Positions 23,241-58,898 of a stretch of DNA of 64,000 nt are shown here, piece by piece (the stretch's first letter is position 1; every line of letters begins with the position of its first letter). The position numbers and the translations under genes were made by a program. The DNA lies in IMG/VR virus record IMGVR_UViG_3300028735_000003, positions 248,001 through 312,000 of that record; one strand, given 5' to 3'. A model generated the notes under the pieces. The model saw only the letters and a list, made by a program, of their open reading frames with translations. It was not told the origin of the DNA and did no database searches.

Positions 23241-23351
23241 ATGCTTCTCCAATTTTATATTCCTGGTATTTTTTATCTAAAATATCTAACAACTTATTTA
23301 AATATTATTTCTAAATTATCAGTTTAATATGATCAATTATAATATCTAATT

Positions 23352-26057: not shown

Positions 26058-26182
26058 ATAGCTTCCATTACTTGATAAGTACTTTAACAAATACACATCT
26101 CACTTATTAGAAAGCAATTTTAACCTAATGTATAGGTTACGTGTGTTTTGTCAGGGAATACGGTACATTTATAGTTATATAG

Positions 26183-27478: not shown

Positions 27479-28726
27479 TTATTCTACAAACTTAACGGTT
27501 TTTACTATGAAATCTAATGTATTTTCATCTCTGATTCTTGAGAATAAGATTTGTAAATATCCTGTTCTATTCATTTCTTGAATAATATCGTCTGGAGTAG
27601 ACTTTGTCTGAGATTGCAAAATATTATGTTTGATTATATCAAACACTTCCTGATCTGATAATTGAGCCTCTGGTTCAACTTCACGAATCCTGTCCAATAT
27701 AAGCGAGAGTTTTACATTATTCTCTGCCATCTCCATAAACTTCCTTCTATCTAAATCCGTTAAATTATCCCACTCCAATTTAGATTGATGCGCCAAGTAT
27801 CTTGCTTCTGATAGAAGCAACCAATTTGGAACTTCAAATTTATGATTTGCTACTAGAAATTTAGATACAACTTCATTAAGTTGCGTTTTAATAGCAATAG
27901 CCATTTTGGCTGCGGCTGATTGCGAAACAAATTCTTTTAGTTCGGCAAAACTGCTTTTACCTACCTTCAATGCCAATTCATCATTTAATGGCATTGGATT
28001 ATTTTTCGCCCCCATATTTAATGTTACTGAGAAATGAATTGTCTTTCCTACCAGAGATGGTAGCCCACCTTCTGGTACAACCAAGTTAAACTCTCTAGTT
28101 TCACCTATAGTCATGCCAAGCAAATTGTCATCAAACGCCGTCAATTGACTATGACCAACTGTAAGCATTTCTCCTTCCGCAGATAGACTATCAACCTTTT
28201 GCCCGTCTATGGAACCAATATAACTGATAATTACATTATCACCCTTCTGAACAAAATCAGTCTCTTCATATGGAAGAGAAGTACCGAATCTAACACGCAA
28301 TTCTTGAAGCATCTTCTCGGCAAGTTCTGCAGAAGTTATTGCTTCATGAGGTTTTGGCAGTTCGAAATCTTTATACGTAGTTAATTCAAAATCTGGCTTT
28401 ACAGCGAGATCAAAATCACACATAAACTTACCATCAGCCATTAACAATGAATTGAATCTTGGCGCTCCATGTGGGCGCAACTTCTTTTCGAATAGAGTAT
28501 TGTGATAAGCATCTTCTGCTAAGCCGCGCTTTAAAGATTCTTCTATTTGGTTTCTATAATACATCTTTATTGCATCTATAGTTGCCCTTCCCTTTCTAAA
28601 ACCTGGAACTGGAGCTTTCCTAAAAGCTTTCAAGACTTCTACCCTCTTATTGAGAATTTCTTCAGCATCAGCTATATAATGAACAGATAACTTACACGGC
28701 TCTATTTCTTTTATTTCAATATCCAT
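27479..28726 (-). CDS. tig: Trigger factor
   Basis: Ribosome-binding signature VPGFRKGR; FKBP-like GDNVIISYIGSIDG...LLGMTIGETREF; helical C domain. Confidence 0.9.
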   Translation of the reverse strand: MDIEIKEIEPCKLSVHYIADAEEILNKRVEVLKAFRKAPVPGFRKGRATIDAIKMYYRNQIEESLKRGLAEDAYHNTLFEKKLRPHGAPRFNSLLMADGKFMCDFDLAVKPDFELTTYKDFELPKPHEAITSAELAEKMLQELRVRFGTSLPYEETDFVQKGDNVIISYIGSIDGQKVDSLSAEGEMLTVGHSQLTAFDDNLLGMTIGETREFNLVVPEGGLPSLVGKTIHFSVTLNMGAKNNPMPLNDELALKVGKSSFAELKEFVSQSAAAKMAIAIKTQLNEVVSKFLVANHKFEVPNWLLLSEARYLAHQSKLEWDNLTDLDRRKFMEMAENNVKLSLILDRIREVEPEAQLSDQEVFDIIKHNILQSQTKSTPDDIIQEMNRTGYLQILFSRIRDENTLDFIVKTVKFVE

Positions 28727-31483: not shown

Positions 31484-33715
31484 TCACCATGTCGAAACTA
31501 CTTGCGCCTTAGATACCATGTTTATATCCTGATTGACAAGTATAGCGTGAGAAAACTTATCCTTCAGCCTATCATTGTGTGTTATGATAAGTATAGTAAA
31601 ATCCTTTTGAAAAAACTTAACAATATCAGCGAACGCATCGACACCTGCCTTATCTAAAGACTGATCAATTTCGTCCAACAATAAAAACTTAATATCTGTA
31701 CCAATCATCTTTTGAAGTAAAAATGATAGTCCTAGCTTAAGACTAAAAATAACAGCTAATTTCATAGCGCCAGATAATTGTTCATACGATCGTTTTCTAC
31801 CATTCATCATATAATTAATCTCTAATGTATCGTCTTGACTTCCATCGCCCTTAGTTTTCTCAATTACAAATGATAATTGAAGACCTGGTTTTAATTGAGT
31901 TAAAATAGCATTTGCTTCTATTTGCAAATCATCTAACACATTTTGTATGATAAGATTTGGTATTCCTACCGACGAAAAAGCCTGAACTACATTAGGATAT
32001 ATAGAGAATTTTGCTTCTAATTTTTCGAGATTATTTTTAAGGGACTTTAGTTTGTTAATATTATCTTCAGATTGGGACACATTATACACAAGAACTGCCT
32101 TAATTGAATTAAGGTGTGCGATTTCTTTGTTAATTGAAGCAAGTTCAACATTTATATTTGCAAGATTGTTTTTCGCGGCGTCTATTTTAGACTGAATATT
32201 TTTTGCCTCTTCCAAAGAAGAGTTATTTAATTCATCTTTTACTTCATTTATTTCTCTTATTTTCTCGGATAAATCAGCAGTAAACTTATTTAAAAGTTGA
32301 TTGTATTCTTCATATATTACTTTTTTATCCTTGATTTCATTATTTTTGTTAGTTATCTGTATATTAATATCTTCCAATTTCTTCTTTGACAGATTTAAGC
32401 TATTAATTTCCTGTTGTAATTTTGAAATCTGTGCTGTCAAAGACACAACTGCTTCTTTAGAAGATTTTATGTTTAATTGGCAATCTGCGATTTCTTTTGA
32501 TACCTGGGCTTTGCATGCCTTTTTGTGTTCTTCTGTGAGCGGTTGACGGCAGTGTTTGCAAATATTATCATCTGGAACAGGTATCTTAAGTTCCTCATAT
32601 CTAGCAACATTTGACTGAATATTGAGATTATGTTTAGTAACCTCTTCTTTCAATAAATTTACATTATCGGACAAAATATCTATTTGCGCATAATCTAACG
32701 ATGCTAATTTCACTTGTATGGCTTTAAGTTCTTCTATCTCTCTAACAATAATCTGTGCTGACTTGATAACATTTGATTTTTTTATTTGGTATTCTTTAAT
32801 AGAATTCTCAAGTTTAGATTTATCCGATTGTAAATTCTTTTCTTTTAATAGTAGTTCTGAAAACTTACTTTCAAGTACAGAATGCGCACTAGTTAGATCA
32901 CTAATTCTTAGAACCTCTTGATCTCTATTATACGAGATATCTCGAAGTAAAGATTGTTTATCACTAATCTTAGTATCGACCTCAGATAATTGTATCTTAA
33001 ATGAAGATAAATCGGATTCTGGATCTTTCAGGCTATCTATTAATGTTTTGTGTTTTTCAATATCTTTTGATATTACTGCCGCTTTATCTTTGGCTATTTT
33101 TTCTAATTTCGAGTAAATTCCAAGCTCCAGAGCATCTTTTAAGATTCCTTTGCGCTTGGCGGGGGTAACAGTACTAAGACCAGTGAAATCATTTTGTATA
33201 AAGTGCAGTGTACTTCTAAACGCACTAAAATTAATCTTGACCAACTTACCTAATTCTTTCTCTGTATCAGACGCTCTACGCCCACCAATATCCTTCCAAT
33301 ACTTAGAAATTAGTTTGTCATCACTTATTGGGACATAAATATCATCAATCTTTAAAGTATGATATACCTCATCATCTGGTCCACCAATCGCGTTTCTCTG
33401 CCATAAAGAAATGTCTGTTGCCCCCTTTCTTGTTCTAGATCTTGACAAACGATACTCTTGACCGTCTATCTCAAAATCAAAAACTATCTTACATAATGAG
33501 GCGTCCTCTCGAATTATCATATCTAGGTTAACATCTGCTTGGTTAAACAATACATATTCTATTGATTTAAATATACTTGTCTTTCCAACTCCGTTTGAAT
33601 ATAGATCATTATTTTCGATTTTCCCAACTATTAAAGCCGAATTAAATTTAGTAAAATCTATAAAGCCATTCGAATAGCACATAAAGTCTTCGATATAAAG
33701 TCTAAGTGGCTTCAA
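31484..33715 (-). CDS. sbcC: SbcC/Rad50/gp46-like ATPase
   Basis: NGVGKTS, FIQNDF, CKHC hook within coiled coil, LSGA signature, LLLDE, ITH. Confidence 0.92.
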   Translation of the reverse strand: MKPLRLYIEDFMCYSNGFIDFTKFNSALIVGKIENNDLYSNGVGKTSIFKSIEYVLFNQADVNLDMIIREDASLCKIVFDFEIDGQEYRLSRSRTRKGATDISLWQRNAIGGPDDEVYHTLKIDDIYVPISDDKLISKYWKDIGGRRASDTEKELGKLVKINFSAFRSTLHFIQNDFTGLSTVTPAKRKGILKDALELGIYSKLEKIAKDKAAVISKDIEKHKTLIDSLKDPESDLSSFKIQLSEVDTKISDKQSLLRDISYNRDQEVLRISDLTSAHSVLESKFSELLLKEKNLQSDKSKLENSIKEYQIKKSNVIKSAQIIVREIEELKAIQVKLASLDYAQIDILSDNVNLLKEEVTKHNLNIQSNVARYEELKIPVPDDNICKHCRQPLTEEHKKACKAQVSKEIADCQLNIKSSKEAVVSLTAQISKLQQEINSLNLSKKKLEDINIQITNKNNEIKDKKVIYEEYNQLLNKFTADLSEKIREINEVKDELNNSSLEEAKNIQSKIDAAKNNLANINVELASINKEIAHLNSIKAVLVYNVSQSEDNINKLKSLKNNLEKLEAKFSIYPNVVQAFSSVGIPNLIIQNVLDDLQIEANAILTQLKPGLQLSFVIEKTKGDGSQDDTLEINYMMNGRKRSYEQLSGAMKLAVIFSLKLGLSFLLQKMIGTDIKFLLLDEIDQSLDKAGVDAFADIVKFFQKDFTILIITHNDRLKDKFSHAILVNQDINMVSKAQVVSTW

Positions 33716-34905
33716 TCTTTTACCTCTATTTTGTAAGTGTTGTAAATGTCTATCGCCAACTCAATAAAATCGGACTGTAGTTTATCTTCAACATATGCTT
33801 TAGCATATGTTTTTATTGCAGAAGGAACATCCATTTTAGTATTCAGAATATTATTAGCATTCGTCTTAATAAGTGTGACCTTTTTAGATTCAAAAATACC
33901 AGCGACATTAAACACGCCTTTTGATACCAAAAACTTATCTATTGCAGATTTGTTTATTGACTCTATGTCAGAAGATTCTAATGATATCTCCACCTTAACT
34001 ATAGATTTATCAAACACGTCTCCTAGCTTATTAATTTCTTCTACGACGTATTCCGTTGAGTTTTTAACTGTTTTTGGTACAGATATTGATATTTTCTTTA
34101 ATGGTCTTGTAGGCAAGATAATCTCAGAATGCTGACCATATATACAATTAAATAAAACAATGCGTTTACTTTGGTCAGTCTCTGCAAAATTAGAAATGTC
34201 CATGCTACCGATATGACAAATCATAGGTTTGTTCTTGATTACCTGCGGTTTATGAACATGTCCCATCCAGACATAATCATATCCAGAAAACATATCTAAT
34301 GGGCAAAACAACTCATTGTTTATATCATCCAGTTCATCTCCAATTGGTATTGATCCCTCAATTGCAATATGACCTATCATAACTTTATGATATGTCACCG
34401 GAATACTAGCTAATTCATAAATTATAGAGTCTTTAAGCATAGATAATGCGGTAGCATAATTATTACTTCCCAAAAACTTTCTATCCTTAAATGGAACCAA
34501 CGTAAACGCAGTAGTATCTATAAATATCGTCGTTATATTCTTATAAACAAAAACATTATCAATTTCTGCCTCAGAAATAATATCCAGAGGAGAATAAATT
34601 ATATTACCATTTCGAAGAATATCGTGGTTTCCAAGTATTATGTGCACTGACACATCATATACTCTACATTTATTTAACCAGGACATGAATAATGTGATAA
34701 GTGACGGATGTGGTTTAGGATCATCAAACACATCTCCAGTAATTATAATATTACTTGCATGGTGTTCTACCGCCTGATCCAACGTCCAATCAAGCAGATC
34801 TAGTTGATCAGATATTCTACTATTTAAACTACTACCTATACCAGCCTTACCTATATTCGTAGACTTACCTATATGCGGATCTCCTAATATTATTATATTA
34901 CTCAT
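33712..34905 (-). CDS. sbcD: SbcD/Mre11/gp47-like nuclease
   Basis: LGDPHIG, ITGDVFD, LGNHD, IGH, MGHVH. Confidence 0.92.
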   Translation of the reverse strand: MSNIIILGDPHIGKSTNIGKAGIGSSLNSRISDQLDLLDWTLDQAVEHHASNIIITGDVFDDPKPHPSLITLFMSWLNKCRVYDVSVHIILGNHDILRNGNIIYSPLDIISEAEIDNVFVYKNITTIFIDTTAFTLVPFKDRKFLGSNNYATALSMLKDSIIYELASIPVTYHKVMIGHIAIEGSIPIGDELDDINNELFCPLDMFSGYDYVWMGHVHKPQVIKNKPMICHIGSMDISNFAETDQSKRIVLFNCIYGQHSEIILPTRPLKKISISVPKTVKNSTEYVVEEINKLGDVFDKSIVKVEISLESSDIESINKSAIDKFLVSKGVFNVAGIFESKKVTLIKTNANNILNTKMDVPSAIKTYAKAYVEDKLQSDFIELAIDIYNTYKIEVKD

Positions 34906-41776: not shown

Positions 41777-43090
41777 TTATTTATTGAAATATTTTTCAGT
41801 TTTAATAACGTTACTACCATTTAAAATATTTTTATCCTTTATTAAGGACTTAAGCGCCGCATTTATATCAGAAGCTATAGGAGACTTGCGATTGTGTGAT
41901 AATGCTTCGAACATAGCTGAAATATAAAGCTCTTTCAAATATGCATAAGAAAAATTGTTTTGAACAGCATATCTTGCAAGATCTTTAGCCTTCGCCATAT
42001 TGATCATATTACCAAACCATCTCTTAATATATATATAAGCCATTTCTTGAGTTGGTAAAGGAATTTCGAATTTTCTATCAAATCTTGATGGTCTATCAGT
42101 AATATTCTTTTTTAATTTTGTAATATCATTGGCAGTAGCTATAACAAGCAAACCGTTTGTCGCAGATATACCATCCATTAGGTTTAAGAAAGATGATGTA
42201 TCAATATTCTCTAAAAGAGAATCTAAATCCTCAAAATATAACAAAGATGGACTTTGTCTTTCGGCGTAATCAAATGCATCACGAACCATACTGGTTGTTG
42301 CATCAGAAACGATAGTTACAGGTTTAAAATTATAAACAGATATAATTGTCTTAATTATAGAAGTCTTGCCATTGCCTGGTTTACCATACAACAGAATTCC
42401 GCGCTTCCAAGGAATCTTGTTTTGTATATAAAATTCGCGTGATGACAAAAAACTTTCAACTAAGCCCCTTAAACTATTCTTAATAGAATCAGGTAAGAAC
42501 AGATCATCCCAAGTAGAACTTCTATCATAAGGTATATCATCATCGCCAATAACCCTAATATGTAGATTAGATCTATCTCTGTCTTGCACCCAACTATCAA
42601 ACCTATTTCTCATAGAGACATAAGCTTCATAGTTAGATTCAGAAACCAATACAAAAAAACTTATTTCATCTTCATTTTGATTTCCTTTATGGAAAAGAGC
42701 AGCATGAATAAACTCAAGACCTTTTCCTTTAATTAAGAATACCCCTTGAATAAAGAATTTTTCGAAATCGTGTTCTGTTTTCCATGAAATTATTGAATCC
42801 TTGTACACACACTCAACGGTCAAATTTTGCTCTTTACAAAACTGTAAAAATTGCCCATCAATAATTATTCTATTTTGAACAAACTTATTTATATTATTAC
42901 GATCACTTAGTAATGATAATGAACCTTCCAGTACCCAATTCATCAGATCTATAAAGTTAGCTGTTGGTCTGGGCGCCCTAGAAGAAAAACGTCCAGTAGA
43001 TGATAAATCTGCAAGATATTTCTCAGTTAAGTGTTCCTGGCGTTCTAACTCTTCTGAAGATACATAAACTAAATTATTATTATTTTTCAT
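41777..43090 (-). CDS. AAA+ ATPase (classic clade) with unknown N-terminal domain
   Basis: KRGILLYGKPGNGKT, LLYFEDLD, IATAN, RPSRFDR. Confidence 0.9.
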   Translation of the reverse strand: MKNNNNLVYVSSEELERQEHLTEKYLADLSSTGRFSSRAPRPTANFIDLMNWVLEGSLSLLSDRNNINKFVQNRIIIDGQFLQFCKEQNLTVECVYKDSIISWKTEHDFEKFFIQGVFLIKGKGLEFIHAALFHKGNQNEDEISFFVLVSESNYEAYVSMRNRFDSWVQDRDRSNLHIRVIGDDDIPYDRSSTWDDLFLPDSIKNSLRGLVESFLSSREFYIQNKIPWKRGILLYGKPGNGKTSIIKTIISVYNFKPVTIVSDATTSMVRDAFDYAERQSPSLLYFEDLDSLLENIDTSSFLNLMDGISATNGLLVIATANDITKLKKNITDRPSRFDRKFEIPLPTQEMAYIYIKRWFGNMINMAKAKDLARYAVQNNFSYAYLKELYISAMFEALSHNRKSPIASDINAALKSLIKDKNILNGSNVIKTEKYFNK

Positions 43091-43097
43091 TTAACTC

Positions 43098-44906
43098 TTA
43101 CTCAGACTTTGTTGTAACCTGTTCGTTTTGTGTTAATGATTTCGTATTATTACATTTTGGATATGCAGAACATGCTAGGAACTTACTTCCGTCTCTCTTT
43201 GCCGTTCTATTATACATTGGACTTCCACATTTGTCGCATAATACCCCACCATGTCTCAAATATGCTTTATCTAGCTCAGCTTTAAAAGCCGGGTAGAATT
43301 TTTTAAGCATATCTATATAGTCTACTTTTTTATGTTCTACATCATCCAATTGTTTTTCCATCTTAGCTGTATAATCATAATCCATAAAAGTAAAATATTC
43401 TTTTAAAATATCTGTAATCTTCTTTCCAAGATCAGTTGCATGAAATACGTTATTTTTATTTTCAACATAATTTCTAGCAGTAATCTTACTTAACAATTCG
43501 GCATAAGTAGCTGGACGACCTATATTTTTTGAATCAAGCTCTTTGATAAGTTTATCTATAGAGTATCTGGGGGGTGGCTGAGTTTGTTTCTTCTCCATCT
43601 TGACAGCTTTGGGTCCGGATAATTTAAGAATATCTCCTTTTTTCAAATTAGGTATATCTATTGAGCTGGTGTCGTTGACACCTAATATATCCAAGAATCC
43701 TTTAGACTTCAACGCTTTTCCTGACGCCTTAACTTCTGCTGACTTGTCACCTTTAACATGTGCAGTAACTTTTAACGTATTATATACGGCAGGAAGCATT
43801 TGGCTTGCTACAAAATATTTCCAAATTGTCTCATATACTAGTTTTTCATCTGGATCAATAATTGCCATATTATTGTGTGGAAGCAAAGTTATCTCTGTTG
43901 GCCTAATGCATTCGTGTGCATCTTGAGCGGCATCTTTGTTATTATACTTGTTAGGTGTTGCTGGTATCTTATAACCTTCATTAGTTAACCAATCTCTTAC
44001 ATCAACAATCGCCTCCTCACCGACTCTAACAGAGTCAGTTCTAATGTAAGAACAATATCCACTTTCATATAATGACTGCGCAGCTTTCATAGTTCTATCT
44101 GCTGCAAATCCATGATTCTTAGACATGATACGTTGTAGGGTGGAAGTAACTAATGGTGCAACAGGATATTTTAGCTCTTCATTGGCAATCACATTTGACA
44201 CTATATATTCTGCATTTTTGTCACCCAACTTATCCTTCATGGCATTTGCCGATGCCAAATCTGTAAGCTTTCCAGAATATTTAGCGATAAAGCTATCGTT
44301 ACCATTTGATAGATTTACTTGAATAGTCCAGAACTCTTCTGGAAGAAAAGCTTCAATTTCTCTTTCTCTATCAACAATCATTCTAGTTACAACAGATTGG
44401 ACTCTGCCTGCTGATAACTTCGGACCAAAAAAGTTCATCAAAAATGGCGACGCCATAAATCCAACTATACGATCTAAAATTCTTCTTGCTTCCTGAGCAT
44501 GGAAAAGATCCATGTCAATATCTCTTGGGTTCTTTAAAGACTTCATTACTACAGATTTCTTAATCTCATTAAAAACTACACGTTTTATTGGTTTTCCAAT
44601 ATCTTCAAGCCTAGTTTTCAGATGCCAAGCTATTGCTTCTCCCTCTCTATCAGGGTCAGATGCAATCAATATTTGATCACATTCTTTTGCAGCAGACATA
44701 AGATCATCTAATACCTTTACCTTATCATCACTTAATACATACCTTGGCTTAAAATTATTTTCAATATCAACTCCAATCCCTAATCTTCCACCCTTTGCTA
44801 ACTCAGTAATATGACCAATACTAGCCATAACAACATAGTCTTTACCAAGAAAACCCTGTATAGTATTAGCCTTATGCGGTGACTCAACAATTATTAATGT
44901 TTTCAT
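43098..44906 (-). CDS. topA: DNA topoisomerase IA
   Basis: LIIVESP, ASDPDREGEAI, LSAGRVQS, CSYIRTDS, DAHECIRPT, IGRPATY, one C-terminal zinc ribbon. Confidence 0.96.
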   Translation of the reverse strand: MKTLIIVESPHKANTIQGFLGKDYVVMASIGHITELAKGGRLGIGVDIENNFKPRYVLSDDKVKVLDDLMSAAKECDQILIASDPDREGEAIAWHLKTRLEDIGKPIKRVVFNEIKKSVVMKSLKNPRDIDMDLFHAQEARRILDRIVGFMASPFLMNFFGPKLSAGRVQSVVTRMIVDREREIEAFLPEEFWTIQVNLSNGNDSFIAKYSGKLTDLASANAMKDKLGDKNAEYIVSNVIANEELKYPVAPLVTSTLQRIMSKNHGFAADRTMKAAQSLYESGYCSYIRTDSVRVGEEAIVDVRDWLTNEGYKIPATPNKYNNKDAAQDAHECIRPTEITLLPHNNMAIIDPDEKLVYETIWKYFVASQMLPAVYNTLKVTAHVKGDKSAEVKASGKALKSKGFLDILGVNDTSSIDIPNLKKGDILKLSGPKAVKMEKKQTQPPPRYSIDKLIKELDSKNIGRPATYAELLSKITARNYVENKNNVFHATDLGKKITDILKEYFTFMDYDYTAKMEKQLDDVEHKKVDYIDMLKKFYPAFKAELDKAYLRHGGVLCDKCGSPMYNRTAKRDGSKFLACSAYPKCNNTKSLTQNEQVTTKSE

Positions 44907-45441: not shown

Positions 45442-46781
45442 TATTCGTATCTTTTGCCTAAAAGATCAAGCGCACTATCTACAATCTTTTTCCTGATTCT
45501 GTTAATATATACCATGCCGCCCATTTGATAGTGTGGTGGTACACGAAGATGTGTTACTGTAACCTCTGTGCCAGGCAATATATCTTGCATTTTGATCTTA
45601 GAAAACCCATAGCTCTTTACATTGGCTAGCAGAGGTTCTTTCGTAGTTTTATCAATCACATTCAAAAGCTTTCCAATATAAAATGGCTGAGAATAGGAGG
45701 CTTTTCTTCCTCCAATATAAAATTCTTGCGTGTTGTTTTTTATATCAAGTTTATCATTTACTACAGCATCAAATACACTTATTCCGTCGAATATATGTAA
45801 ATTAGGATCTAATAAAGAATCTACCCTATAGATCTTACCCCTTTTCTTAAAACAGAATGGGAATGAATCTTCCAACAACCTAATATACTCTTGAAAAATC
45901 TTGTTCTGAAAGCCACCAGTACGTCTTTTATGCAAAAGATACTCAACAATTTCTTCCGGATATATCTCCAGCATGTTCTTAAAAGCCTGATAAACTAGTA
46001 CTTTATGAATTAAAGTAAAATCCGTTCCATTATATGGAACATTATTGCTTTGATTGTCAATAATATCTTTTAATAGTCTTACATTATTATCTAGTTCTTC
46101 ATTACGCTTTAATTGTGTATGAGAATCTATACTTAATAAGCTATTATCTACTTTTATAACAAGATCTGTGTCTCCGAAAAATCTTTCCGGATTTGTTTGT
46201 GAACTTGGATGGTTCATCTTTTTTAGATCTGTTATGTTACCAACAAAATAACAATCCAAGTACGGACAAGAAATCGTATCAGAACCGCCATATATTGGCT
46301 TTGGAATAAATCTATTACAATTTGGGCATTTATAACCATTCTTGTTGTGATGCTTAAACGATTTAAAAAAGCTCTGTTTTTTATGGTCTGTTGTTGATAA
46401 GTATGCGCGTGAACACTCATCACATTTAAATATATTGCCTGTAGGTATAATAAGATTGGTCTTACACAAGAACAAACAACCGGGACATAGATATTCTATG
46501 GTTTTCTTATAAGATTGCGCCGCAAGTTGCTTTGCAAATGTATTAGATATATAGAATAAATATGAGTCTACGCCCTCAGTGGAATTATTATTATTGACAA
46601 ATGTCACACAACCAGATCTTAATTTACCTATTAATTCTGATATAAAGGCATCAAAAGATAAATTAGTAGCGTATGGATTAGATACTCTATGCAGAGTAGA
46701 TAACCCTCTATCATACCTTTCCAAAAAATCTTGAACTATAGCATCAATATCTGATAGATTTAACTGACTAGTTTCTTCCAT
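45441..46781 (-). CDS. Hypothetical multi-zinc-ribbon protein
   Basis: CPGC, CDEC, CPNC, CPYLDC. Confidence 0.65.
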   Translation of the reverse strand: MEETSQLNLSDIDAIVQDFLERYDRGLSTLHRVSNPYATNLSFDAFISELIGKLRSGCVTFVNNNNSTEGVDSYLFYISNTFAKQLAAQSYKKTIEYLCPGCLFLCKTNLIIPTGNIFKCDECSRAYLSTTDHKKQSFFKSFKHHNKNGYKCPNCNRFIPKPIYGGSDTISCPYLDCYFVGNITDLKKMNHPSSQTNPERFFGDTDLVIKVDNSLLSIDSHTQLKRNEELDNNVRLLKDIIDNQSNNVPYNGTDFTLIHKVLVYQAFKNMLEIYPEEIVEYLLHKRRTGGFQNKIFQEYIRLLEDSFPFCFKKRGKIYRVDSLLDPNLHIFDGISVFDAVVNDKLDIKNNTQEFYIGGRKASYSQPFYIGKLLNVIDKTTKEPLLANVKSYGFSKIKMQDILPGTEVTVTHLRVPPHYQMGGMVYINRIRKKIVDSALDLLGKRYE

Positions 46782-47781
46782 TTAACCTACCAAAAAAATT
46801 GCAAACTTCAGCAGCATCTGTATATGCAATCTGGAATCTTTCCAAAAATCTTAAATGATCTTTTAGTAAAGCATCACCCATTCCATACAAATGTTCTGCA
46901 CCAATAGTGTCTAATATAATCTTAGAATCGACATGACTAGCTACTTGACATGCGATACGAACTGGAAAATTAGATTTTATTGTTCCATCAATAATATTAG
47001 CTGATGGACGCTGAGTAGATAAAACTATAGAAATCTTAGCCGCTCTACACTTTTGCGCTAAACGACATAGTTTAGTGTAGAATTTATTATCGGCGTCTTG
47101 TAATATAATGTCAGCAAACTCATCAATCATCAATACGACATATGGAATATGTGAAGATGGTATTCCTTTTTTTAGTAGTTCGTATCTGAACTCCATCACC
47201 TTTAGCAATGTATCTAAAGTATTAATTGTATCTTTATATGTATAACCGACTTGTACATTCTTGAAATTATACTTTTCATATTCATAAAATTCAATGCCCT
47301 TTGGATCTATCAAAAATGTAAAAACATTGTTATAGTTCATAATATTAGCGATTAGGTTATGCATCAGTGTACTCTTGCCTGAGCCAGTGGTTCCAGCAAT
47401 AATCATATGAGGATTCTTAGCTAAATCCATCCAAACACGCTTTCCAAAAATATCTTGCCCCAATAGGCAAATCACATCACCATCTGGAACTTCATCGTCA
47501 ACAGCAAAGTACTCAAATAGATTTAATGTCGAAGTTCTACGTGTAACAAATTCCAATCTCACAATACCTTCGTCATAAAGTACTTTTATTGTAGGTCTTC
47601 CTGGCGCCTTAAGTGACATGGAAATTTCATCACAATATTTATGGACGTCTTTAACTTTGGCGCCCCGTTCTAAAACCAAATCATAGAATGCATAGTTATC
47701 AGTGTTTTTGTAATTTATACAATTAGCCCTAATATGAAGAGATTTTAGAATCTCATTCATTCTAGCAACATTATCCATCAC
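46768..47781 (-). CDS. FtsK/SpoIIIE-like ATPase (soluble, no transmembrane or gamma domain)
   Basis: PHMIIAGTTGSGKS, LIDPK, VLMIDEFAD, STQRPS, AEHLYGMGDAL. Confidence 0.9.
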   Translation of the reverse strand: MMDNVARMNEILKSLHIRANCINYKNTDNYAFYDLVLERGAKVKDVHKYCDEISMSLKAPGRPTIKVLYDEGIVRLEFVTRRTSTLNLFEYFAVDDEVPDGDVICLLGQDIFGKRVWMDLAKNPHMIIAGTTGSGKSTLMHNLIANIMNYNNVFTFLIDPKGIEFYEYEKYNFKNVQVGYTYKDTINTLDTLLKVMEFRYELLKKGIPSSHIPYVVLMIDEFADIILQDADNKFYTKLCRLAQKCRAAKISIVLSTQRPSANIIDGTIKSNFPVRIACQVASHVDSKIILDTIGAEHLYGMGDALLKDHLRFLERFQIAYTDAAEVCNFFGRLNGRN

Positions 47782-47850
47782 TACACCTCTGAGATAGATA
47801 CCCCTCTATTTCAGTAGAAATATAATCACGAATTTAGTACGTGCAAGGGC

Positions 47851-48258
47851 TCAGTATTTTACTAAATTGTTATATTTTCTAGCAATAATTTTTTTTAATT
47901 CAGATTCAGTGGGGGTAATAAAGCCAACTTTATCGCCCACCTTTATATTAGCACTATCTATTGTACCAAATGGAAATTCTACAACCAAATCACTAGGCTG
48001 ATCTTCTCCGACAGTATGTGTAGTGAACGGTTCTCCAACACATATTTGCGTAATTTTTCCATTACAGCAGAACACAATGTCTAATGGGCTTGGCGTATTT
48101 TTCATCCAAAATTTATTAATCCTAGGCGAAGAATATACAAAAGACATGATTGGCGGTGGAAATGGCTCAAACATCAATCCCATAGATTGTTCATCTTCGG
48201 ATATTGCCAATAATGTAGGAAATACATTATCATTGATATATATGTAACCATGTTCCAT
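47851..48258 (-). CDS. DUF192-family protein
   Basis: GLMF, FWMKNTPSPLDIVF, LVVEFP. Confidence 0.85.
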   Translation of the reverse strand: MEHGYIYINDNVFPTLLAISEDEQSMGLMFEPFPPPIMSFVYSSPRINKFWMKNTPSPLDIVFCCNGKITQICVGEPFTTHTVGEDQPSDLVVEFPFGTIDSANIKVGDKVGFITPTESELKKIIARKYNNLVKY

Positions 48259-48269
48259 TACTTATTGCC

Positions 48270-49760
48270 TCATCTAGACGTATCCACTGGAAAAGTTATT
48301 CTTGGAACCAATCTTTCAGCCAATTGTCTATTCTTACGGCTCATGATCAATTTATCAAGTCTTGTCTTTTGATCTAAAGGTAGATTACTAGTATCTAGTT
48401 GCATTGTAGACAATATAGATTCCAAACTTTCTTTCATTACAAAATAAGGTTTTATGATGCGCTCACTCAGTAACTCTGTAAGCTTATCTGGAATAAAATC
48501 TTTTTCAAGTTCATTCATAAACTCATCTAAACCTTTTCTCATATCTTCAGCATAATTATACGCCAATAATCTGCTTGAATTCGTTTTTCTAGTAATAATA
48601 GATCTTAGCAATTTACCATGCATTTTGCTAAGCAAATAATCTGCTTGAACTTCTAAACCAGAACCAGAATAATCTTCGAATGCAATAGCAGATAGTTCAG
48701 CAATCTCAGATAATGATGTCGCATTTGTGTTTCGTACAGAATTTAAACCCATCAAAATCGCATTATATGTGGAAACTATTTGCTCTGCTAGAATGGTTTT
48801 CATTTTAGCATTATCTGTATTAAGATATTTATCTAATAACGAAATAATTTCAACTCTCATGGATTGATCCATATCCAAGAATAAAGTGGAAGCCTTTTGC
48901 CAATCTGGTATAATCTTGGTATCCACTTCTTGAATGATTCTATTCGCTATAGATTCAGTAGATTTACTAGGTGCTGCTAGCGGGATTTCTCTAGTACCAA
49001 TTGGGGTTACTTCTGATGCACCTCCGGATGTTCTTTCTGGCGATTTTTCCACTACATTTGGTTTGGGTTCCATGTCTTCAAGTTTTTTTGCAGCTACTTG
49101 CAAAGATTGAAACATTTCATTCCATCTATTCTCAATTTCTATAAGAATAGAATTTGCTTCTTCAAGTCCCTCAAAATCATCACTAAAGGATTTAAACTTT
49201 ACTATATTGGATTGAAATTTAGAACACAACTTATATATTTGATGTGCCGAAGTTAATAGACTAATTCTTGCTCTACGTTTGATAGCAGCAGCACTATTAC
49301 CAAATCTCGGTCCCCTTAGCGTTGATAAGAATCTAGTTAAAGGATTTGATCCTACTGAAATTAATTCTGCCATTTCTACACTAGCTGACAATGGTAATGA
49401 CAATTGTTTAGTTAAATCTGGTGACACTGGAGTTTCTGGCGAAGCAGCGGGTTGTTTAGGTCTCTTCTTCCTTCTAGTTTGAGAATATGCAATTTGTGCT
49501 GCAATTATATCATTTCCTTCGTTTACAATTTCTACAAAATCTTTACCTAACACACCAAGTATGGTTGCCGGATCTTTTGGAATAGGATCAGTTATCCTAG
49601 ATCTTTCCATTAAAAACTTAGATGGCCAACCGTTCATCATCTTTTTCAGATGAATAAGATCATCAATGAATTCTGACACTTTCTTGTTCCATCTGGCTTT
49701 GCGCTCTCTAAGAGATTGCTGAACAGGATCAGATGATTTTTTTTGTGCTGTAACAATCAT
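48270..49760 (-). CDS. Hypothetical helical protein
   Basis: 496 aa ORF. Confidence 0.7.
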   Translation of the reverse strand: MIVTAQKKSSDPVQQSLRERKARWNKKVSEFIDDLIHLKKMMNGWPSKFLMERSRITDPIPKDPATILGVLGKDFVEIVNEGNDIIAAQIAYSQTRRKKRPKQPAASPETPVSPDLTKQLSLPLSASVEMAELISVGSNPLTRFLSTLRGPRFGNSAAAIKRRARISLLTSAHQIYKLCSKFQSNIVKFKSFSDDFEGLEEANSILIEIENRWNEMFQSLQVAAKKLEDMEPKPNVVEKSPERTSGGASEVTPIGTREIPLAAPSKSTESIANRIIQEVDTKIIPDWQKASTLFLDMDQSMRVEIISLLDKYLNTDNAKMKTILAEQIVSTYNAILMGLNSVRNTNATSLSEIAELSAIAFEDYSGSGLEVQADYLLSKMHGKLLRSIITRKTNSSRLLAYNYAEDMRKGLDEFMNELEKDFIPDKLTELLSERIIKPYFVMKESLESILSTMQLDTSNLPLDQKTRLDKLIMSRKNRQLAERLVPRITFPVDTSR

Positions 49761-49840: not shown

Positions 49841-50422
49841 TCATATTACATGATCAATTATGCCATATTTCAAAGCTTCATTTGGTTCCAGAAATAAATC
49901 CCTTTTGCAATCTTCCTTTACTTTATTCAAATCATTTCCAGTACTATCTGCTAACATCTTCATAAGTTTATCATTATTCTTCTTAGCGAATTCAAAATAA
50001 TTTTTCGAATTAACCTGGTCATCTCCAGGTATAGGAAATTCGAATTGAATACCATGGATCATGATTTTAGAATTTTTGTAAGCATATCTTTTGCCCTTAG
50101 TACCGGATGCCAATAATATCGCTGCGGCAGAAAACGCTTTACCTAAACATATTGTTTTTACAGGGGCTCTGATCATATTAATAACGTCATAAATTTGCAC
50201 TAACGCATCTCCATCTCCACCATTTGAATGTATATAAATACTAATATCATCGGTTGGGCTCATATTATCATAATACAATAATAAAGCCGACAATTCTGAT
50301 GCCACCTCTTTTGTAATACCTTCCTTAAGAAATATTATTCTGTCTTTTGACAAAAAAACATATGATGTGTCATATTTTGTGTTCTTTAATAGTAAAAGAT
50401 TCTCTGCTTCATATAATTTCAT
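49841..50422 (-). CDS. clpP: ClpP protease subunit, catalytic triad intact
   Basis: YIHSNGG, CLGKAFSAAA (Ser), IMIHG (His), KRDLFL (Asp). Confidence 0.92.
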   Translation of the reverse strand: MKLYEAENLLLLKNTKYDTSYVFLSKDRIIFLKEGITKEVASELSALLLYYDNMSPTDDISIYIHSNGGDGDALVQIYDVINMIRAPVKTICLGKAFSAAAILLASGTKGKRYAYKNSKIMIHGIQFEFPIPGDDQVNSKNYFEFAKKNNDKLMKMLADSTGNDLNKVKEDCKRDLFLEPNEALKYGIIDHVI

Positions 50423-50434
50423 AATACAAAAACC

Positions 50435-51019
50435 TTATTTCCTAAAAGGAACCACCTTATCTATAAACCCTCTTTTAAGTGCTTGACGACTATCCATAAA
50501 AACAAGTCTTTCATATTTAGACATTGCTTGTTTTAATGATATATTAGTTTTTCTTGCAATTATATCCATCATCTTTTTATTATCGCTTAAAGAATGGTTT
50601 AGCATGGTTTGAGCATCAGTTATATCAGAATGATGTACCCAGCTATTAACTAACTGCCCTGCGCAAATAATAGAATTCTTAGTTGCCAACCTCATACCAG
50701 GTGTTCCAGCAACCAATAAAATGACTGCCTCTTTCATAGCTGAGCCGATACATACAGTCTCTATTGGAGAATCGATCATAGTAATCATATCATAAATTGC
50801 CAAAGCACTTCTTATGTCTCCTCCTCTAGAATTAATAAATATGGTTATTTTATTATCAGAATCTTCACTATCTAGTAATAATAATGTGGCTGATATATCT
50901 GCAGCCATGTCATCATCAATATCTCCAGATACGAATAATATTCGATCATTAGATAACTTCTGAAACACATCAATAGATACTTCGCCTTCTTCAGTATTTT
51001 CAGTTACTATAGTATTCAA
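50435..51019 (-). CDS. ClpP paralogue lacking all three catalytic residues (ClpR-like)
   Basis: DRILFV, FINSRGG; CIGSAMKEA (Ser to Lys), NSIICAGQ (His lost), ERLVFM (Asp lost). Confidence 0.88.
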   Translation of the reverse strand: MNTIVTENTEEGEVSIDVFQKLSNDRILFVSGDIDDDMAADISATLLLLDSEDSDNKITIFINSRGGDIRSALAIYDMITMIDSPIETVCIGSAMKEAVILLVAGTPGMRLATKNSIICAGQLVNSWVHHSDITDAQTMLNHSLSDNKKMMDIIARKTNISLKQAMSKYERLVFMDSRQALKRGFIDKVVPFRK

Positions 51020-51381
51020 CTTTGTTCCCTATTCCTCTGTTTTTCCTCTATCTCTCGATCTTCTGCACAATCAACACATATTTCGACGTAAGGATTGAAT
51101 AACAATCTTTTCTCTGGAATATCTTCACCACAATCATCACAAATTCCATATGTGCTGTTTTTCAGTTTAGCTAATGCGGTCTCAATCTGAACAAGCTTTT
51201 GAGCATTTCGTGTACTTAGTTGGTTTTGCATTTCAATTAATAAATTACCCTGGATTTCGTCATATTCATCTCCGTCAGTGTCAATCTCTATATCCTGTTC
51301 CATATTAGCTGTAATTATAAGCTGACGTTTCTGCGCCAGCAATTCTTCTTCAATCTTCTTAAGAAAAGCTTTACTTAACAT
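51016..51381 (-). CDS. dksA: DksA/TraR-family C4 zinc-finger protein
   Basis: Coiled-coil tip DEYD (DxxD), YGICDDCGEDIPEKRL...CVDCAE. Confidence 0.9.
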   Translation of the reverse strand: MLSKAFLKKIEEELLAQKRQLIITANMEQDIEIDTDGDEYDEIQGNLLIEMQNQLSTRNAQKLVQIETALAKLKNSTYGICDDCGEDIPEKRLLFNPYVEICVDCAEDREIEEKQRNREQS

Positions 51382-51761
51382 TACATAAACCTCAAGTCAG
51401 AAATGGGTACTGTAATAGTACCAGTTGGTGCAGATGCTTTCTTACCATCTACTCGTTTAATAAAAACGAGATATGCCTGATTTTCAGGCTCTTTTAACAA
51501 AAAGGCATTAACATACCAATCATTGAATATTGCTTTCTTGGTCTGATTAGAAAATTTTAACATTCTTGTAGTCTCCAGTACATGCGATTTTTTCTTATAA
51601 AAAGGACCAAGAATTTCTTTTGCTTTTAAAGATGTTTGCTCACTGAACAAATTTCCAGCTTCATCCTGAGATGAAGCGGCAATAATTCTATTAATTAGAT
51701 CGCCATTTTCTCCAATAGAACTACATACATATACTACCTGTCTGGCACCCTTTCTACTCAT
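51381..51761 (-). CDS. Hypothetical protein
   Basis: 126 aa, coupled overlap with dksA. Confidence 0.65.
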   Translation of the reverse strand: MSRKGARQVVYVCSSIGENGDLINRIIAASSQDEAGNLFSEQTSLKAKEILGPFYKKKSHVLETTRMLKFSNQTKKAIFNDWYVNAFLLKEPENQAYLVFIKRVDGKKASAPTGTITVPISDLRFM

Positions 51762-52094
51762 TTAGCCATCCTTAAACGTCCTGTCAATATCTAAAAAATC
51801 ACAGATTTTTTTTCTAATTTTTGTAACAAGTGAAAATCGCAATATTTTGTTACCATTAGATTGAAGAACCTTATTATACCTAACATCATGATATCGTCTT
51901 GGTTTCATCTGCTTTAATGAAATAGTTCCAAAATTAACTATCTTTATGTCTTTTCCATTATTCAAATCCTTAATCAACTCGTCAAATAATATTGATATAA
52001 CACTATAAACATGTGCGTGATGAATAGCCCTATTAATTCTTAGATTAACATATTGCCATAGTATTTTTCTACTTATGCTTGTTGGTATATTCAT
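51762..52094 (-). CDS. HU/IHF-like DNA-binding protein
   Basis: ISILFDELIKDLNNGKDIKIVNFGTISLKQMKPR. Confidence 0.85.
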   Translation of the reverse strand: MNIPTSISRKILWQYVNLRINRAIHHAHVYSVISILFDELIKDLNNGKDIKIVNFGTISLKQMKPRRYHDVRYNKVLQSNGNKILRFSLVTKIRKKICDFLDIDRTFKDG

Positions 52095-56226: not shown

Positions 56227-56251
56227 GATATACAATATAACATGTCTTTTG

Positions 56252-56323
56252 CATCCCTAGCAGGACTCGAACCTGCATATATCAGTTTAGGAAACTGACG
56301 CCTCTCCTTTAGGCTATAGGGAC
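56252..56323 (-). tRNA. tRNA-Arg(CCU), CCA not encoded
   Basis: Acceptor GTCCCTA/TAGGGAT (G1:U72), D stem GCCT/AGGC, anticodon arm TCAGT-TTCCTAA-ACTGA, T arm GCAGG-TTCGAGT-CCTGC. Confidence 0.92.
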
Positions 56324-58536: not shown

Positions 58537-58898
58537 TGGTGGAGGATCGGGGGATCGAACCCCGGTCTTGAATACTTCGCGATTAAACTCATTCACAAAC
58601 TTAGTTGATGTTTATCTGTCATCAGCACCAGTGAAAGAATTCGCTCTAACTGGCTAGTTACTGTTCATTTCGAATGTTAAATCCGTAACCGACAAAACAT
58701 TCTATCCTTAGTGTGTTGAGCATTCATCAGATACCAAGAATATCTCTCCTAGAACACTCCAATTAAGCAGCTTGTGCCATTGGAACAAATGCATTGTCGT
58801 TTGCATTTATACGTTGATTGCTTTTTAACGAGTCCCTGCAATCATCCCCGGTTTGCATTTAAATCGCTATTTACCCAATCGAAACCAAATTATCCCCC
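58537..58898 (-). ncRNA. ssrA: tmRNA; tag peptide (A)ANDNAFVPMAQAA
   Basis: 5' GGGGGAT pairs with ATCCTCC-ACCA (G3:U70); T arm GGTTCGATCCC; resume context ATAAAT-GCA AAC GAC; tag ends GCT GCT TAA. Confidence 0.95.

What the first reader, a model, noticed from the sequence alone, without database searches (positions are those of the whole stretch)
49841..51381. Phage ClpP/ClpR-like pair: one active and one triad-less subunit, co-transcribed with DksA, plus a phage tmRNA degron
Seen: tandem clpP paralogues; the downstream one has Ser-His-Asp, the upstream one has lost all three. The tmRNA tag ends in AQAA. Known: inactive ClpR subunits in hetero-oligomeric cores are described in cyanobacteria, plastids and apicomplexans, and C-terminal AA is the ClpXP degron. 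Inference: a self-contained tag-and-degrade system, or a decoy that poisons or retargets host ClpP. No ClpX/ClpA or SmpB is in this window.
Basis: partly seen in the sequence, partly recalled or inferred. Interest (0 to 1): 0.72.

Follow-up and report, generated by a model that had tools for sequence, protein, structure and literature searches.

The report
Huge-phage dead-plus-live ClpP protease pair
A lineage of very large phages (about 350-470 kb) carries, as a conserved core operon, one working ClpP protease subunit and one permanently inactive copy behind a DksA-like transcription factor, a phage version of the mixed active/inactive Clp cores known from cyanobacteria and plastids, which apparently arose independently.

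Summary
On the minus strand lie a DksA-like gene (51016-51381), a triad-less ClpP paralogue (50435-51019; K96/G121/L172 replace Ser/His/Asp) and an active ClpP (49841-50422; S98/H123/D175). A full-length tmRNA (tag ANDNAFVPMAQAA) lies 7 kb away.

The window belongs to a 354-kb virus record. The three-gene order recurs in every related locus with room for it, down to 33% identity. The inactive copy is not decaying: it forms one diverse clade (support 100/100), and its dN is usually equal to or lower than its active partner's.

It keeps the canonical N-terminal axial hairpin, starts at the mature N-terminus and usually uses a TTG start beside the DksA stop. The active copy has a variable N-terminus modelled with low confidence.

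Cyanobacterial ClpR forms a separate clade, so the likeness is probably convergent, though an AU test does not reject a common origin.

No ClpX/ClpA/ClpC-type unfoldase, ClpS or SmpB was found here. None of ClpX/ClpA/ClpC or SmpB was found in five complete relatives. The system is therefore not self-contained.

Best reading: a phage hetero-oligomeric ClpP core that depends on host unfoldases. Ring arrangement, substrates and any tmRNA link are inferred.

The parts
50435..51019 (-). Pseudo-ClpP ('UP'), 194 aa, TTG start. It has the ClpP fold, with K96, G121 and L172 in place of Ser, His and Asp. The N-terminal axial hairpin is canonical and there is no propeptide.
   Evidence: Pfam CLP_protease 146 bits. 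Alignments to solved ClpPs and E. coli ClpP. AF2 model pLDDT 90.7 with hairpin strands 4-9 and 12-17. Foldseek top hits are M. tuberculosis ClpP2, TM 0.93. The family is one clade with support 100/100.
49841..50422 (-). Active ClpP ('DN'), 193 aa, ATG start. S98, H123 and D175 are present. The N-terminal ~20 residues are divergent and modelled with low confidence. The handle motif H-G-[IV]-Q-x-x-F-P-[IL]-P-G-x-D is family-specific.
   Evidence: Pfam CLP_protease 162 bits. PDB alignments, 36-44% identity to Thermus and Coxiella ClpP. Triad invariant in the family alignment. AF2 residues 1-23 have pLDDT below 50.
51016..51381 (-). DksA/TraR-family C4 zinc-finger protein, 121 aa. Its stop codon overlaps the TTG start of the pseudo-ClpP.
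   Evidence: Pfam zf-dskA_traR 53.8 bits and PHROG phrog_54. Alignment with E. coli DksA shows D71, D74 and all four Cys invariant across phage homologues. Junction sequence AGTTGA.
58537..58898 (-). Full-length one-piece tmRNA with tag ANDNAFVPMAQAA. It is a conserved neighbour, about 7.2 kb from the clpP pair here and 9-12 kb in five relatives.
   Evidence: ARAGORN. Rfam RF00023, 117 bits, model positions 1-374. Present in 5 of 5 complete relatives. Tags read in four of them.
51381..52094 (-). Two conserved upstream genes of the same gene string: an HU-like DNA-binding protein (51762-52094) and a 126-aa protein of unknown function (51381-51761).
   Evidence: Pfam Bac_DNA_binding 37.7 bits. 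Synteny in L004, L005, L007, L009 and L014. The Atlas search of the 126-aa protein was uninformative.
46768..49760 (-). Conserved downstream genes: a 496-aa unknown protein, a DUF192 protein and an FtsK/SpoIIIE-like ATPase.
   Evidence: Pfam. The same order is seen in distant relatives.

Best explanation
The two genes encode the subunits of a phage-owned, hetero-oligomeric ClpP proteolytic core. One subunit is catalytically dead but structurally intact and keeps the canonical N-terminal axial hairpin. The other subunit carries Ser-His-Asp and has a divergent N-terminus. They are made from one compact operon. Translation of the dead subunit is probably coupled to the preceding DksA-like gene through a conserved TTG start. 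Shown: both are bona fide ClpP-family proteins; the triad is lost in one and kept in the other; the trio is a conserved core module of a lineage of roughly 350-470-kb phages; the dead copy is under purifying selection at least as strong as that on the live one; and it forms a single old clade that groups with the phage's own active ClpP family, not with cyanobacterial ClpR. Inferred: the two proteins assemble together, as in ClpP1P2 or ClpP/ClpR cores. The dead subunits would supply the gated face that docks an unfoldase, and the live subunits would supply the chemistry. Because no ClpX/ClpA/ClpC-type unfoldase is encoded, the core would work with host AAA+ unfoldases. That would let the phage redirect or supplement host Clp proteolysis during infection. 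Proteins tagged by the phage's own ssrA-like tmRNA are possible but unproven substrates.
For: Family membership and triad status. Conserved trio: about 40 loci, 30 of them unique, all with DksA-like, pseudo-ClpP and ClpP in that order and gaps of a few nucleotides. The pair holds in the most divergent members at 33-46% identity, although a DksA match is missing in two loci. Selection: all 120 closest homologues and about 44 clusters at 50% identity lack all three catalytic residues yet keep length and fold. dN of the dead copy is usually equal to or lower than dN of the live copy, with dN/dS of 0.04-0.2 where computable and dS saturated. Monophyly is 100/100, sister to the group holding the active family at 85/71. 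N-terminal asymmetry: the hairpin residues N3, T4, E8, T10, E11, G13, E14, D18, Y20, K22, L23 and R27 are 61-98% conserved in the dead family, while the live family is variable before Y16. AF2 predicts the hairpin in the dead copy only. Ring-ring sensor pair (E. coli positions 169/170): the dead family keeps D/E169 (84%) and R170 (86%), while the live family has K169 (65%). Contact model: 2+2 chains give ipSAE 0.83 against 0.01 for the best control (mark reached by 58 of 80 solved complexes and 2 of 110 mismatched pairs). The interface uses both in-ring faces and the handles. TTG start at the conserved N-terminus in 23 of 27 unique loci, -4 to +12 nt from the DksA stop. No phage unfoldase or SmpB. 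No ClpS in this record.
Against: There is no biochemical or expression evidence, and no RNA run was available. The complex prediction is of a family with many solved homologous complexes, so it may score from memory. It cannot tell mixed rings from stacked homo-rings. Both subunits keep mostly hydrophobic residues at the unfoldase-docking pocket positions, so the sequence does not prove that docking is limited to the dead subunit. The host is unknown, so no host unfoldase could be examined. Two phage AAA+ ATPases of other clades cannot be ruled out as partners: a YjoB-like one at 41777-43090 and an AAA_5-like one. The structural module was not located, so a virion-maturation role is not excluded by context alone.
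Confidence: 0.6

Rival explanations
1. Decoy or poison. The dead subunit acts mainly on host components. It either co-assembles with host ClpP to inactivate or retarget it, or it forms dead rings that soak up host ClpX/ClpA. This would protect phage proteins from host Clp proteolysis.
For: The dead subunit keeps exactly the parts needed to engage unfoldases and partner rings: the N-terminal hairpin, D/E169-R170 and hydrophobic pocket positions. The phage encodes no unfoldase.
Against: The dead gene is never seen without its own active partner immediately downstream in about 40 loci. The two families have diverged in parallel. Both have lineage-specific handle insertions, +2 and +3 residues against E. 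coli. This fits a dedicated partnership better than a fit to diverse host ClpPs.
Confidence: 0.15
2. Unfoldase-independent protease. Because the active subunit lacks the canonical gating N-terminus, its pore is constitutively open, and the complex degrades unstructured or nascent polypeptides without any AAA+ partner. The dead subunit would serve only as a scaffold or activator.
For: The N-terminus of the active family is variable and modelled with low confidence, and the pore-lining hydrophobic residues 3-7 are absent. No unfoldase is encoded. From general knowledge, N-terminally truncated or ADEP-opened ClpP degrades unfolded proteins without an ATPase.
Against: The strongly conserved canonical hairpin of the dead subunit would be hard to explain without an axial partner. 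Low model confidence is not proof of an open pore.
Confidence: 0.12
3. Head-maturation (prohead) protease of the ClpP-like type, as automatic annotation would call it.
For: The best PHROG hits are 'head maturation protease' families: phrog_94 at 82 and 53 bits. RefSeq names some jumbo-phage ClpPs this way. No S77 or S78 prohead protease was found. Phage G ClpP was detected in virions (PMC12484599).
Against: Matches to cellular ClpP are much stronger and run end to end: Pfam 162 and 146 bits, and the top 50 Foldseek hits for both models are genuine ClpPs at TM 0.82-0.93. Both proteins end with the ClpP core and have no scaffold or capsid-targeting extension. The neighbours are DksA, HU, FtsK-like, TopoIA and DNA-replication genes. 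The failure to find other prohead proteases is uninformative, because capsid models also find nothing in six genomes.
Confidence: 0.08
4. The upstream copy is a decaying duplicate with no function.
For: All three catalytic residues are lost, and the replacement residues vary between relatives.
Against: The reading frame is intact and the length constant in all homologues. There are about 44 clusters at 50% identity in one clade. Many family-specific residues are 85-100% conserved. dN is no higher than in the active partner, and dN/dS is 0.04-0.2.
Confidence: 0.01

Closest known systems
Cyanobacterial / plastid / apicoplast ClpR with ClpP3 (ClpP/R cores; review PMC7966870)
   Same: A ClpP paralogue without catalytic activity is encoded next to an active ClpP. 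In the five cyanobacteria examined, clpR also lies immediately upstream of its active partner. The inactive subunit has no propeptide, as the review reports for P. falciparum ClpR.
   Different: The origin is probably separate. ClpR nests among cyanobacterial ClpPs, and the phage family groups with the phage active family, although the AU test does not reject a joint clade (p 0.19). Four of the six ClpRs examined have G-H-[LM] at the triad positions and so keep the His; the two Capilliphycus copies have G-T-T and G-N-M. The phage family has lost all three residues, with D/K, S/G/N and R/K/L. The setting is a phage genome with no cognate ClpC or ClpX.
Bacterial ClpP1P2 two-ring heterocomplexes (M. 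tuberculosis, Listeria, Chlamydia, P. aeruginosa)
   Same: Two paralogues lie in one operon. The N-termini are asymmetric. The dead subunit's model superposes best on M. tuberculosis ClpP2 (TM 0.93), which from general knowledge is the ring that docks ClpX/ClpC1.
   Different: In those systems both paralogues keep catalytic residues (Listeria ClpP1 has Asn for Asp). Here one partner is completely dead. The ring composition is unknown.
Single ClpP genes of jumbo phages (Iyer et al. 2021, PMC7824862; phage G ClpP+ClpX, PMC12484599; Lak phages, Asteriusvirus)
   Same: These are phage-encoded bona fide ClpPs, proposed there to act on host proteins.
   Different: Those phages carry one active ClpP. 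One checked example is LR756504, which has a single S-H-D copy. Phage G brings its own ClpX. The pseudo-subunit, the DksA linkage and the lack of an unfoldase are specific to this lineage. All GenBank phage hits are below 43% identity.
Phage- and huge-phage-encoded tmRNAs (Al-Shayeb et al. 2020, PMC7162821)
   Same: A full-length tmRNA is carried in a huge phage genome.
   Different: That paper reports tmRNA together with SmpB in huge phage genomes generally. This lineage has tmRNA without SmpB.

Membership tests
ClpP (MEROPS S14, Pfam CLP_protease) | Sequence match to the family model over its curated cut-off, end to end | tested here: met
   162 bits (downstream) and 146 bits (upstream) against a cut-off of 20.2, covering profile positions 2-179 of 182.
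ClpP (MEROPS S14, Pfam CLP_protease) | Ser-His-Asp catalytic triad | tested here: met
   This row is for the downstream protein only: S98, H123 and D175, invariant in its family. The upstream protein fails this feature with K96, G121 and L172, so it is a pseudo-enzyme member of the fold family, not a protease.
ClpP (MEROPS S14, Pfam CLP_protease) | ClpP fold with handle helix and N-terminal axial hairpin | tested here: met
   These are predicted models only. Upstream: pLDDT 90.7, TM 0.93 to M. tuberculosis ClpP2, hairpin present. Downstream: pLDDT 83.4, TM about 0.82 over 173 columns, hairpin not predicted.
ClpP (MEROPS S14, Pfam CLP_protease) | Double-heptamer assembly and functional docking of a ClpX/ClpA/ClpC unfoldase | not testable with these tools
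   Only a 2+2-chain contact model could be run: ipSAE 0.83 against a best control of 0.01 (mark reached by 58 of 80 solved complexes and 2 of 110 mismatched pairs). No unfoldase is encoded and the host is unknown.
ClpR (cyanobacterial/plastid inactive Clp subunit) | Belongs to the ClpR clade | tested here: inconclusive
   The best trees put the phage family (100/100) and ClpR (100/100) apart, each beside active ClpPs of its own kind. Forcing them together costs 54.7 log-likelihood units, but the AU p is 0.19, so it is not rejected.
ClpR (cyanobacterial/plastid inactive Clp subunit) | Residues at triad positions as in ClpR (G-H-[LM] in 4 of the 6 ClpRs examined, from five cyanobacteria) | tested here: not met
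   The phage family has D/K at the Ser position, S/G/N at His and R/K/L at Asp. There is no His.
ClpP1P2-type two-ring heterocomplex | Two co-operonic paralogues with asymmetric N-termini | tested here: met
   The genes are 12 nt apart. Hairpin conservation and prediction are limited to the upstream protein.
ClpP1P2-type two-ring heterocomplex | Each paralogue forms its own heptameric ring, and the unfoldase binds only one ring | not testable with these tools
   The contact model used both in-ring and handle surfaces between the two proteins. It cannot separate the arrangements.
ClpP-like phage head-maturation protease | Placed in the head module, with a scaffold or capsid-targeting extension | tested here: not met
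   The neighbours are DksA-like, HU-like, DUF192, FtsK-like, TopoIA and replication genes. Both proteins end with the ClpP core at 193-194 aa. The PHROG hit is weaker than the Pfam ClpP hit. Caveat: the capsid genes were not located.
tmRNA (Rfam RF00023) | Full-length match over the gathering score, an alanine-type acceptor stem and a tag reading frame | tested here: met
   117 bits against 47, model positions 1-374. With ARAGORN's start, the 5' GGGGGAU pairs with AUCCUCC and gives G3-U70 (read). Tag ANDNAFVPMAQAA followed by a stop.
DksA/TraR | C4 zinc finger plus a coiled-coil tip with two Asp | tested here: met
   All four Cys and D71/D74 are invariant in nine aligned sequences. The Ala of DxxDxA is I/V/G in the phage proteins. 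The N-terminal 30 residues of E. coli DksA are absent.

The most novel reading that the evidence does not exclude
This huge-phage lineage runs its own proteostasis take-over kit. Its centre would be a half-dead, asymmetric ClpP machine. A catalytically dead ring captures host ClpX/ClpA/ClpC, which sequesters them from host ClpP. Substrates are then fed into a phage-made catalytic ring. The phage tmRNA, which has ssrA-like tags and no SmpB of its own, and a phage trigger factor would shape what is tagged and folded. The whole kit would be expressed with a DksA-like factor that reprograms host RNA polymerase.
Probability: 0.2. Interest if true: 0.8.

Novelty: new variant of a known kind. Interest (0 to 1): 0.62.

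Why it matters
Inactive ClpP paralogues built into Clp cores have so far been treated as a feature of cyanobacteria, plastids and apicoplasts. Why a protease keeps dead subunits is still debated. Here the same solution appears to have arisen separately in a virus. It has been kept as a core gene across a deep, diverse phage lineage, in a two-gene form small enough to express and reconstitute easily.

This gives a simple system for asking what dead subunits do: gating, unfoldase docking, or limiting the number of active sites. It also bears on how large phages use host AAA+ unfoldases. Practically, it warns that automatic labels such as 'head maturation protease' or 'ATP-dependent Clp protease proteolytic subunit' on these genes hide a pseudo-enzyme.

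Tried and rejected
1. RNA evidence for co-transcription. No RNA run holding the region was listed.

2. GenBank phages by DNA gave no match. Protein mode found only distant single ClpPs.

3. A phage unfoldase.
   - The only AAA_2-type hit in the record is an AAA_5-like ATPase (phrog_1297) split by a LAGLIDADG intein, not ClpX.
   - One relative has a 739-aa ClpB-like protein, but I saw no IGF/IGL-type loop when reading its sequence.
   - A YjoB-like AAA ATPase at 41777-43090 lacks an aromatic pore loop.

4. SmpB, the ClpX zinc finger and ClpS were all absent.

5. Excluding the prohead-protease reading by finding another prohead protease. The S77 and S78 models found nothing, but the capsid models also found nothing, so this is uninformative.

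6. Function of the conserved 126-aa and 496-aa neighbours. Pfam, PHROG and Atlas gave nothing above chance.

7. The search for related loci with the wide alignment failed for lack of a conserved stretch. A narrower alignment worked.

8. dN/dS is only a bound, because dS is saturated or incomputable in most pairs.

9. Host identification was not achieved. The tag prefix ANDN resembles proteobacterial ssrA tags, but that is from memory only. The samples are microbial-mat and hot-spring metagenomes.

10. My first by-eye alignment put Ala at the His position of the upstream protein. HMMER and MAFFT both place G121 there.
Full report
**What is there**

The window is bases 248001-312000 of a 353,765-bp linear IMG/VR virus record, estimated 79% complete. 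GC content is about 32%. Between 46.7 and 53.7 kb, almost all genes lie on the minus strand in a tight string. In order, the string holds:
- an HU-like protein (51762-52094);
- a 126-aa unknown protein (51381-51761);
- a DksA/TraR zinc-finger protein (51016-51381);
- a first ClpP homologue, 'UP' (50435-51019, TTG start);
- a second ClpP homologue, 'DN' (49841-50422);
- a 496-aa unknown protein;
- a DUF192 protein;
- an FtsK-like ATPase.

These assignments rest on Pfam.

Both ClpP homologues match CLP_protease end to end, at 146 and 162 bits. Both align over their whole length with solved ClpPs. Against E. coli ClpP taken from NC_000913, DN has S98, H123 and D175. UP has K96, G121 and L172 at the same columns. 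The two proteins are 36% identical.

The DksA stop and the UP start overlap in the sequence AGTTGA. Twelve nucleotides separate UP from DN.

A full-length tmRNA with tag ANDNAFVPMAQAA lies at 58537-58898 on the same strand. It scores 117 bits against the Rfam model. Co-transcription remains an inference from gene packing, because no RNA run was available.

**It is a conserved module, not an accident of this genome**

The dead copy has 489 database homologues. All of the 120 closest (58-99% identity) lack all three catalytic residues. They sit on contigs of up to 467 kb.

An exhaustive search of 1.8 billion representatives found about 44 clusters at 50% identity of fully triad-less proteins. 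Ordinary S-H-D ClpPs take over only below that.

In about 40 related loci, 30 of them unique, the order DksA-like, dead ClpP, live ClpP is kept with gaps or overlaps of a few bases. The pair, followed by the unknown protein, DUF192, FtsK-like and TopoIA genes, persists in members only 33-46% identical. The DksA match is missing in two of these loci.

At the conserved N-terminus the start codon is TTG in 23 of 27 unique loci, -4 to +12 nt from the DksA stop. This suggests conserved translational coupling and a controlled subunit ratio. That step is inference.

**The dead copy is under selection**

Where synonymous divergence could be estimated it is saturated. dN/dS values of 0.04-0.2 are therefore only bounds. 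In most genome pairs, however, dN of the dead copy is equal to or lower than dN of its active partner, and lower than that of the DksA-like gene.

Many residues specific to the dead family are 85-100% conserved. The former active-site positions are variable but patterned: D or K at the Ser position, E at position 98 in 90% of sequences, and R, K or L at the Asp position. An acidic residue at the first site co-occurs with a basic residue at the last in 89 of 156 sequences.

**Where it came from**

In maximum-likelihood trees the dead proteins form one clade on a long stem. Support is SH-aLRT 100 and 100/100. Their sister group holds the phage active family plus a few other S-H-D proteins, with support 82 to 85/71.

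ClpR and ClpP paralogues were taken from five cyanobacterial genomes. ClpR forms its own clade with 99-100 support, nested among cyanobacterial ClpPs. Four of the six ClpRs keep the His, with the pattern G-H-L/M.

The simplest reading is a duplication inside the phage lineage and convergence with ClpR. An AU test did not reject forcing the two inactive groups together (p = 0.19), so independent origin is likely rather than proven.

**Anatomy that bears on mechanism**

*Dead subunit.* It starts exactly where mature ClpP starts and has no propeptide. It keeps the axial hairpin residues at 61-98% conservation. AlphaFold2 models that hairpin, with overall pLDDT 90.7. The best structural matches are M. 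tuberculosis ClpP2 chains at TM 0.93.

*Live subunit.* Its first ~20 residues are variable in length and sequence. They are modelled with pLDDT below 50, and the pore-lining hydrophobic stretch is missing. Its core matches genuine ClpPs at TM about 0.82.

*Handles and ring contacts.* Both handles carry lineage-specific insertions, +2 and +3 residues relative to E. coli. The live family has an invariant H-G-[IV]-Q-x-x-F-P-[IL]-P-G-x-D motif. At the positions that form the inter-ring Asp/Arg sensor in S. aureus ClpP (my own knowledge of that literature), the dead family keeps D/E and R, while the live family mostly has K at the acidic position. This would disfavour live-live ring stacking and allow dead-live contacts. 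That step is inference.

*Contact model.* A 2+2-chain model scored ipSAE 0.83 against 0.01 for the best control. The mark was reached by 58 of 80 solved complexes and 2 of 110 mismatched pairs. The interface uses both side-by-side and handle surfaces. This supports compatibility of the two proteins. It does not support a particular ring arrangement, and it may reflect memory of solved ClpP complexes.

**What is missing**

This record has no ClpX zinc finger, no ClpX/ClpA/ClpC-type AAA_2 protein, no ClpS and no SmpB.

Five relatives of 432-473 kb, rated 97-100% complete and one with terminal repeats, also lack SmpB. They also lack any unfoldase with a ClpP-docking loop. What they do have:
- an AAA_5-like ATPase, split by an intein in this genome and in one relative;
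- in one genome only, a ClpB-like protein without an IGF/IGL loop.

A YjoB-like classical AAA ATPase lies 7 kb downstream at 41777-43090. It has no aromatic pore loop.

The system is therefore not self-contained. If it uses an unfoldase, that unfoldase is most likely the host's.

**The tmRNA**

All five complete relatives carry a tmRNA 9-12 kb from the clpP pair. The tags read in the window and four relatives are:
- ANDNAFVPMAQAA (the window and one relative);
- ANDNASAPLALAA;
- ANDNATAPYALAA;
- ANDNSIAPLAQVA.

They fit a 13-residue pattern ANDN-x3-P-x-A-[LQ]-[AV]-A with ssrA-like ends.

The tmRNA and the ClpP pair are both core genes of the lineage, so their co-occurrence does not by itself show a functional link. 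Proteins tagged by this RNA would be expected substrates of any ClpXP-type machine, whether host or hybrid. That is inference.

**Rivals**

*Decoy or poison of host ClpP or ClpX.* This remains possible. It explains the obligatory, co-diverging active partner less well.

*Open-gate, unfoldase-independent protease.* The odd N-terminus of the live subunit allows this reading.

*Head-maturation protease.* PHROG and some RefSeq records suggest this label. It is disfavoured by the end-to-end likeness to cellular ClpP, the absence of any extension and the non-structural neighbourhood. It could not be excluded by locating the head module, because neither capsid nor prohead-protease models match anything in six genomes.

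*Neutral decay.* This is refuted.

**Literature**

ClpP in jumbo phages is known and has been proposed to target host proteins (PMC7824862). Phage G carries ClpP and ClpX (PMC12484599). Huge-phage tmRNAs have been reported together with SmpB (PMC7162821). ClpR biology is reviewed in PMC7966870.

Searches for a phage active/inactive ClpP pair found nothing. One published 636-kb phage that was checked has a single active ClpP.

**Verdict**

This is a real, conserved and apparently undescribed phage variant of the heteromeric ClpP/ClpR or ClpP1P2 theme. It is most likely a phage-built proteolytic core that works with host unfoldases.

Noticed in passing
window 27479-28726 (-): A phage-encoded trigger factor homologue: Trigger_N at 73.9 bits plus Trigger_C at 46.8 bits, 415 aa. 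With the ClpP pair and the tmRNA, this is a third proteostasis component in the same 64 kb.
   Followed up: no
window 41777-43090 (-): A 437-aa classical AAA ATPase. Its best solved relative is B. subtilis YjoB (7w42, E 2e-33). There is no aromatic pore loop between Walker A and Walker B. It lies in the same gene string, 7 kb downstream of the clpP pair.
   Followed up: partly
L003 766-2907 (G000:C1 about 319.5-321.7 kb, outside the window): An AAA_5-like ATPase (phrog_1297) is interrupted, right after its Walker A motif, by an intein-like insert that matches the LAGLIDADG homing-endonuclease family. It is 713 aa here and 726 aa in relative G001. The same protein is an uninterrupted 370 aa in the relatives whose copy was read (G002, G004).
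   Followed up: partly
window 21996-26096 (-): DNA polymerase III alpha appears split. The PHP, core and finger domains are in a 914-aa ORF (23352-26096). The HHH_6 part is in a separate 418-aa ORF (21996-23252) about 100 nt downstream.
   Followed up: no
window 58537-58898 (-) and L078 1501-1853: The tmRNA tag peptide is identical (ANDNAFVPMAQAA) in this genome and in a relative whose ClpP-pair proteins are only about 62% identical. ARAGORN missed the tmRNA in four other relatives where Rfam found it (51-71 bits). I read the tag frames of three of those four by hand.
   Followed up: partly
window 50435-51019 (-), start codon at 51017-51019: The pseudo-ClpP uses a TTG start that overlaps or abuts the DksA stop. 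TTG is kept at this position in 23 of 27 unique related loci.
   Followed up: yes
L071 1210-3429 (relative G005): One relative alone carries a 739-aa ClpB-like two-ring AAA+ protein (AAA_2 at 214 bits, ClpB_D2-small). I saw no IGF/IGL-type ClpP-docking loop when reading its sequence.
   Followed up: partly
window 18568-19755, 31484-34905, 43098-44906 (-); tRNA 56251-56323 (-): RecA, an SbcC/SbcD-like pair, topoisomerase IA and a tRNA-Arg(CCT) lie in the same window. Relatives also carry Thg1 and dTDP-sugar epimerase-like genes near the module.
   Followed up: no
whole record and relatives G001-G005: Pfam capsid models (Phage_capsid, Gp23) and the S78 prohead-protease model match nothing in six genomes of this lineage. 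The S77 model was searched in this record only and also matched nothing. IMG/VR labels two of the 430-450-kb relatives 'provirus'. The source samples are microbial-mat and hot-spring metagenomes.
   Followed up: no
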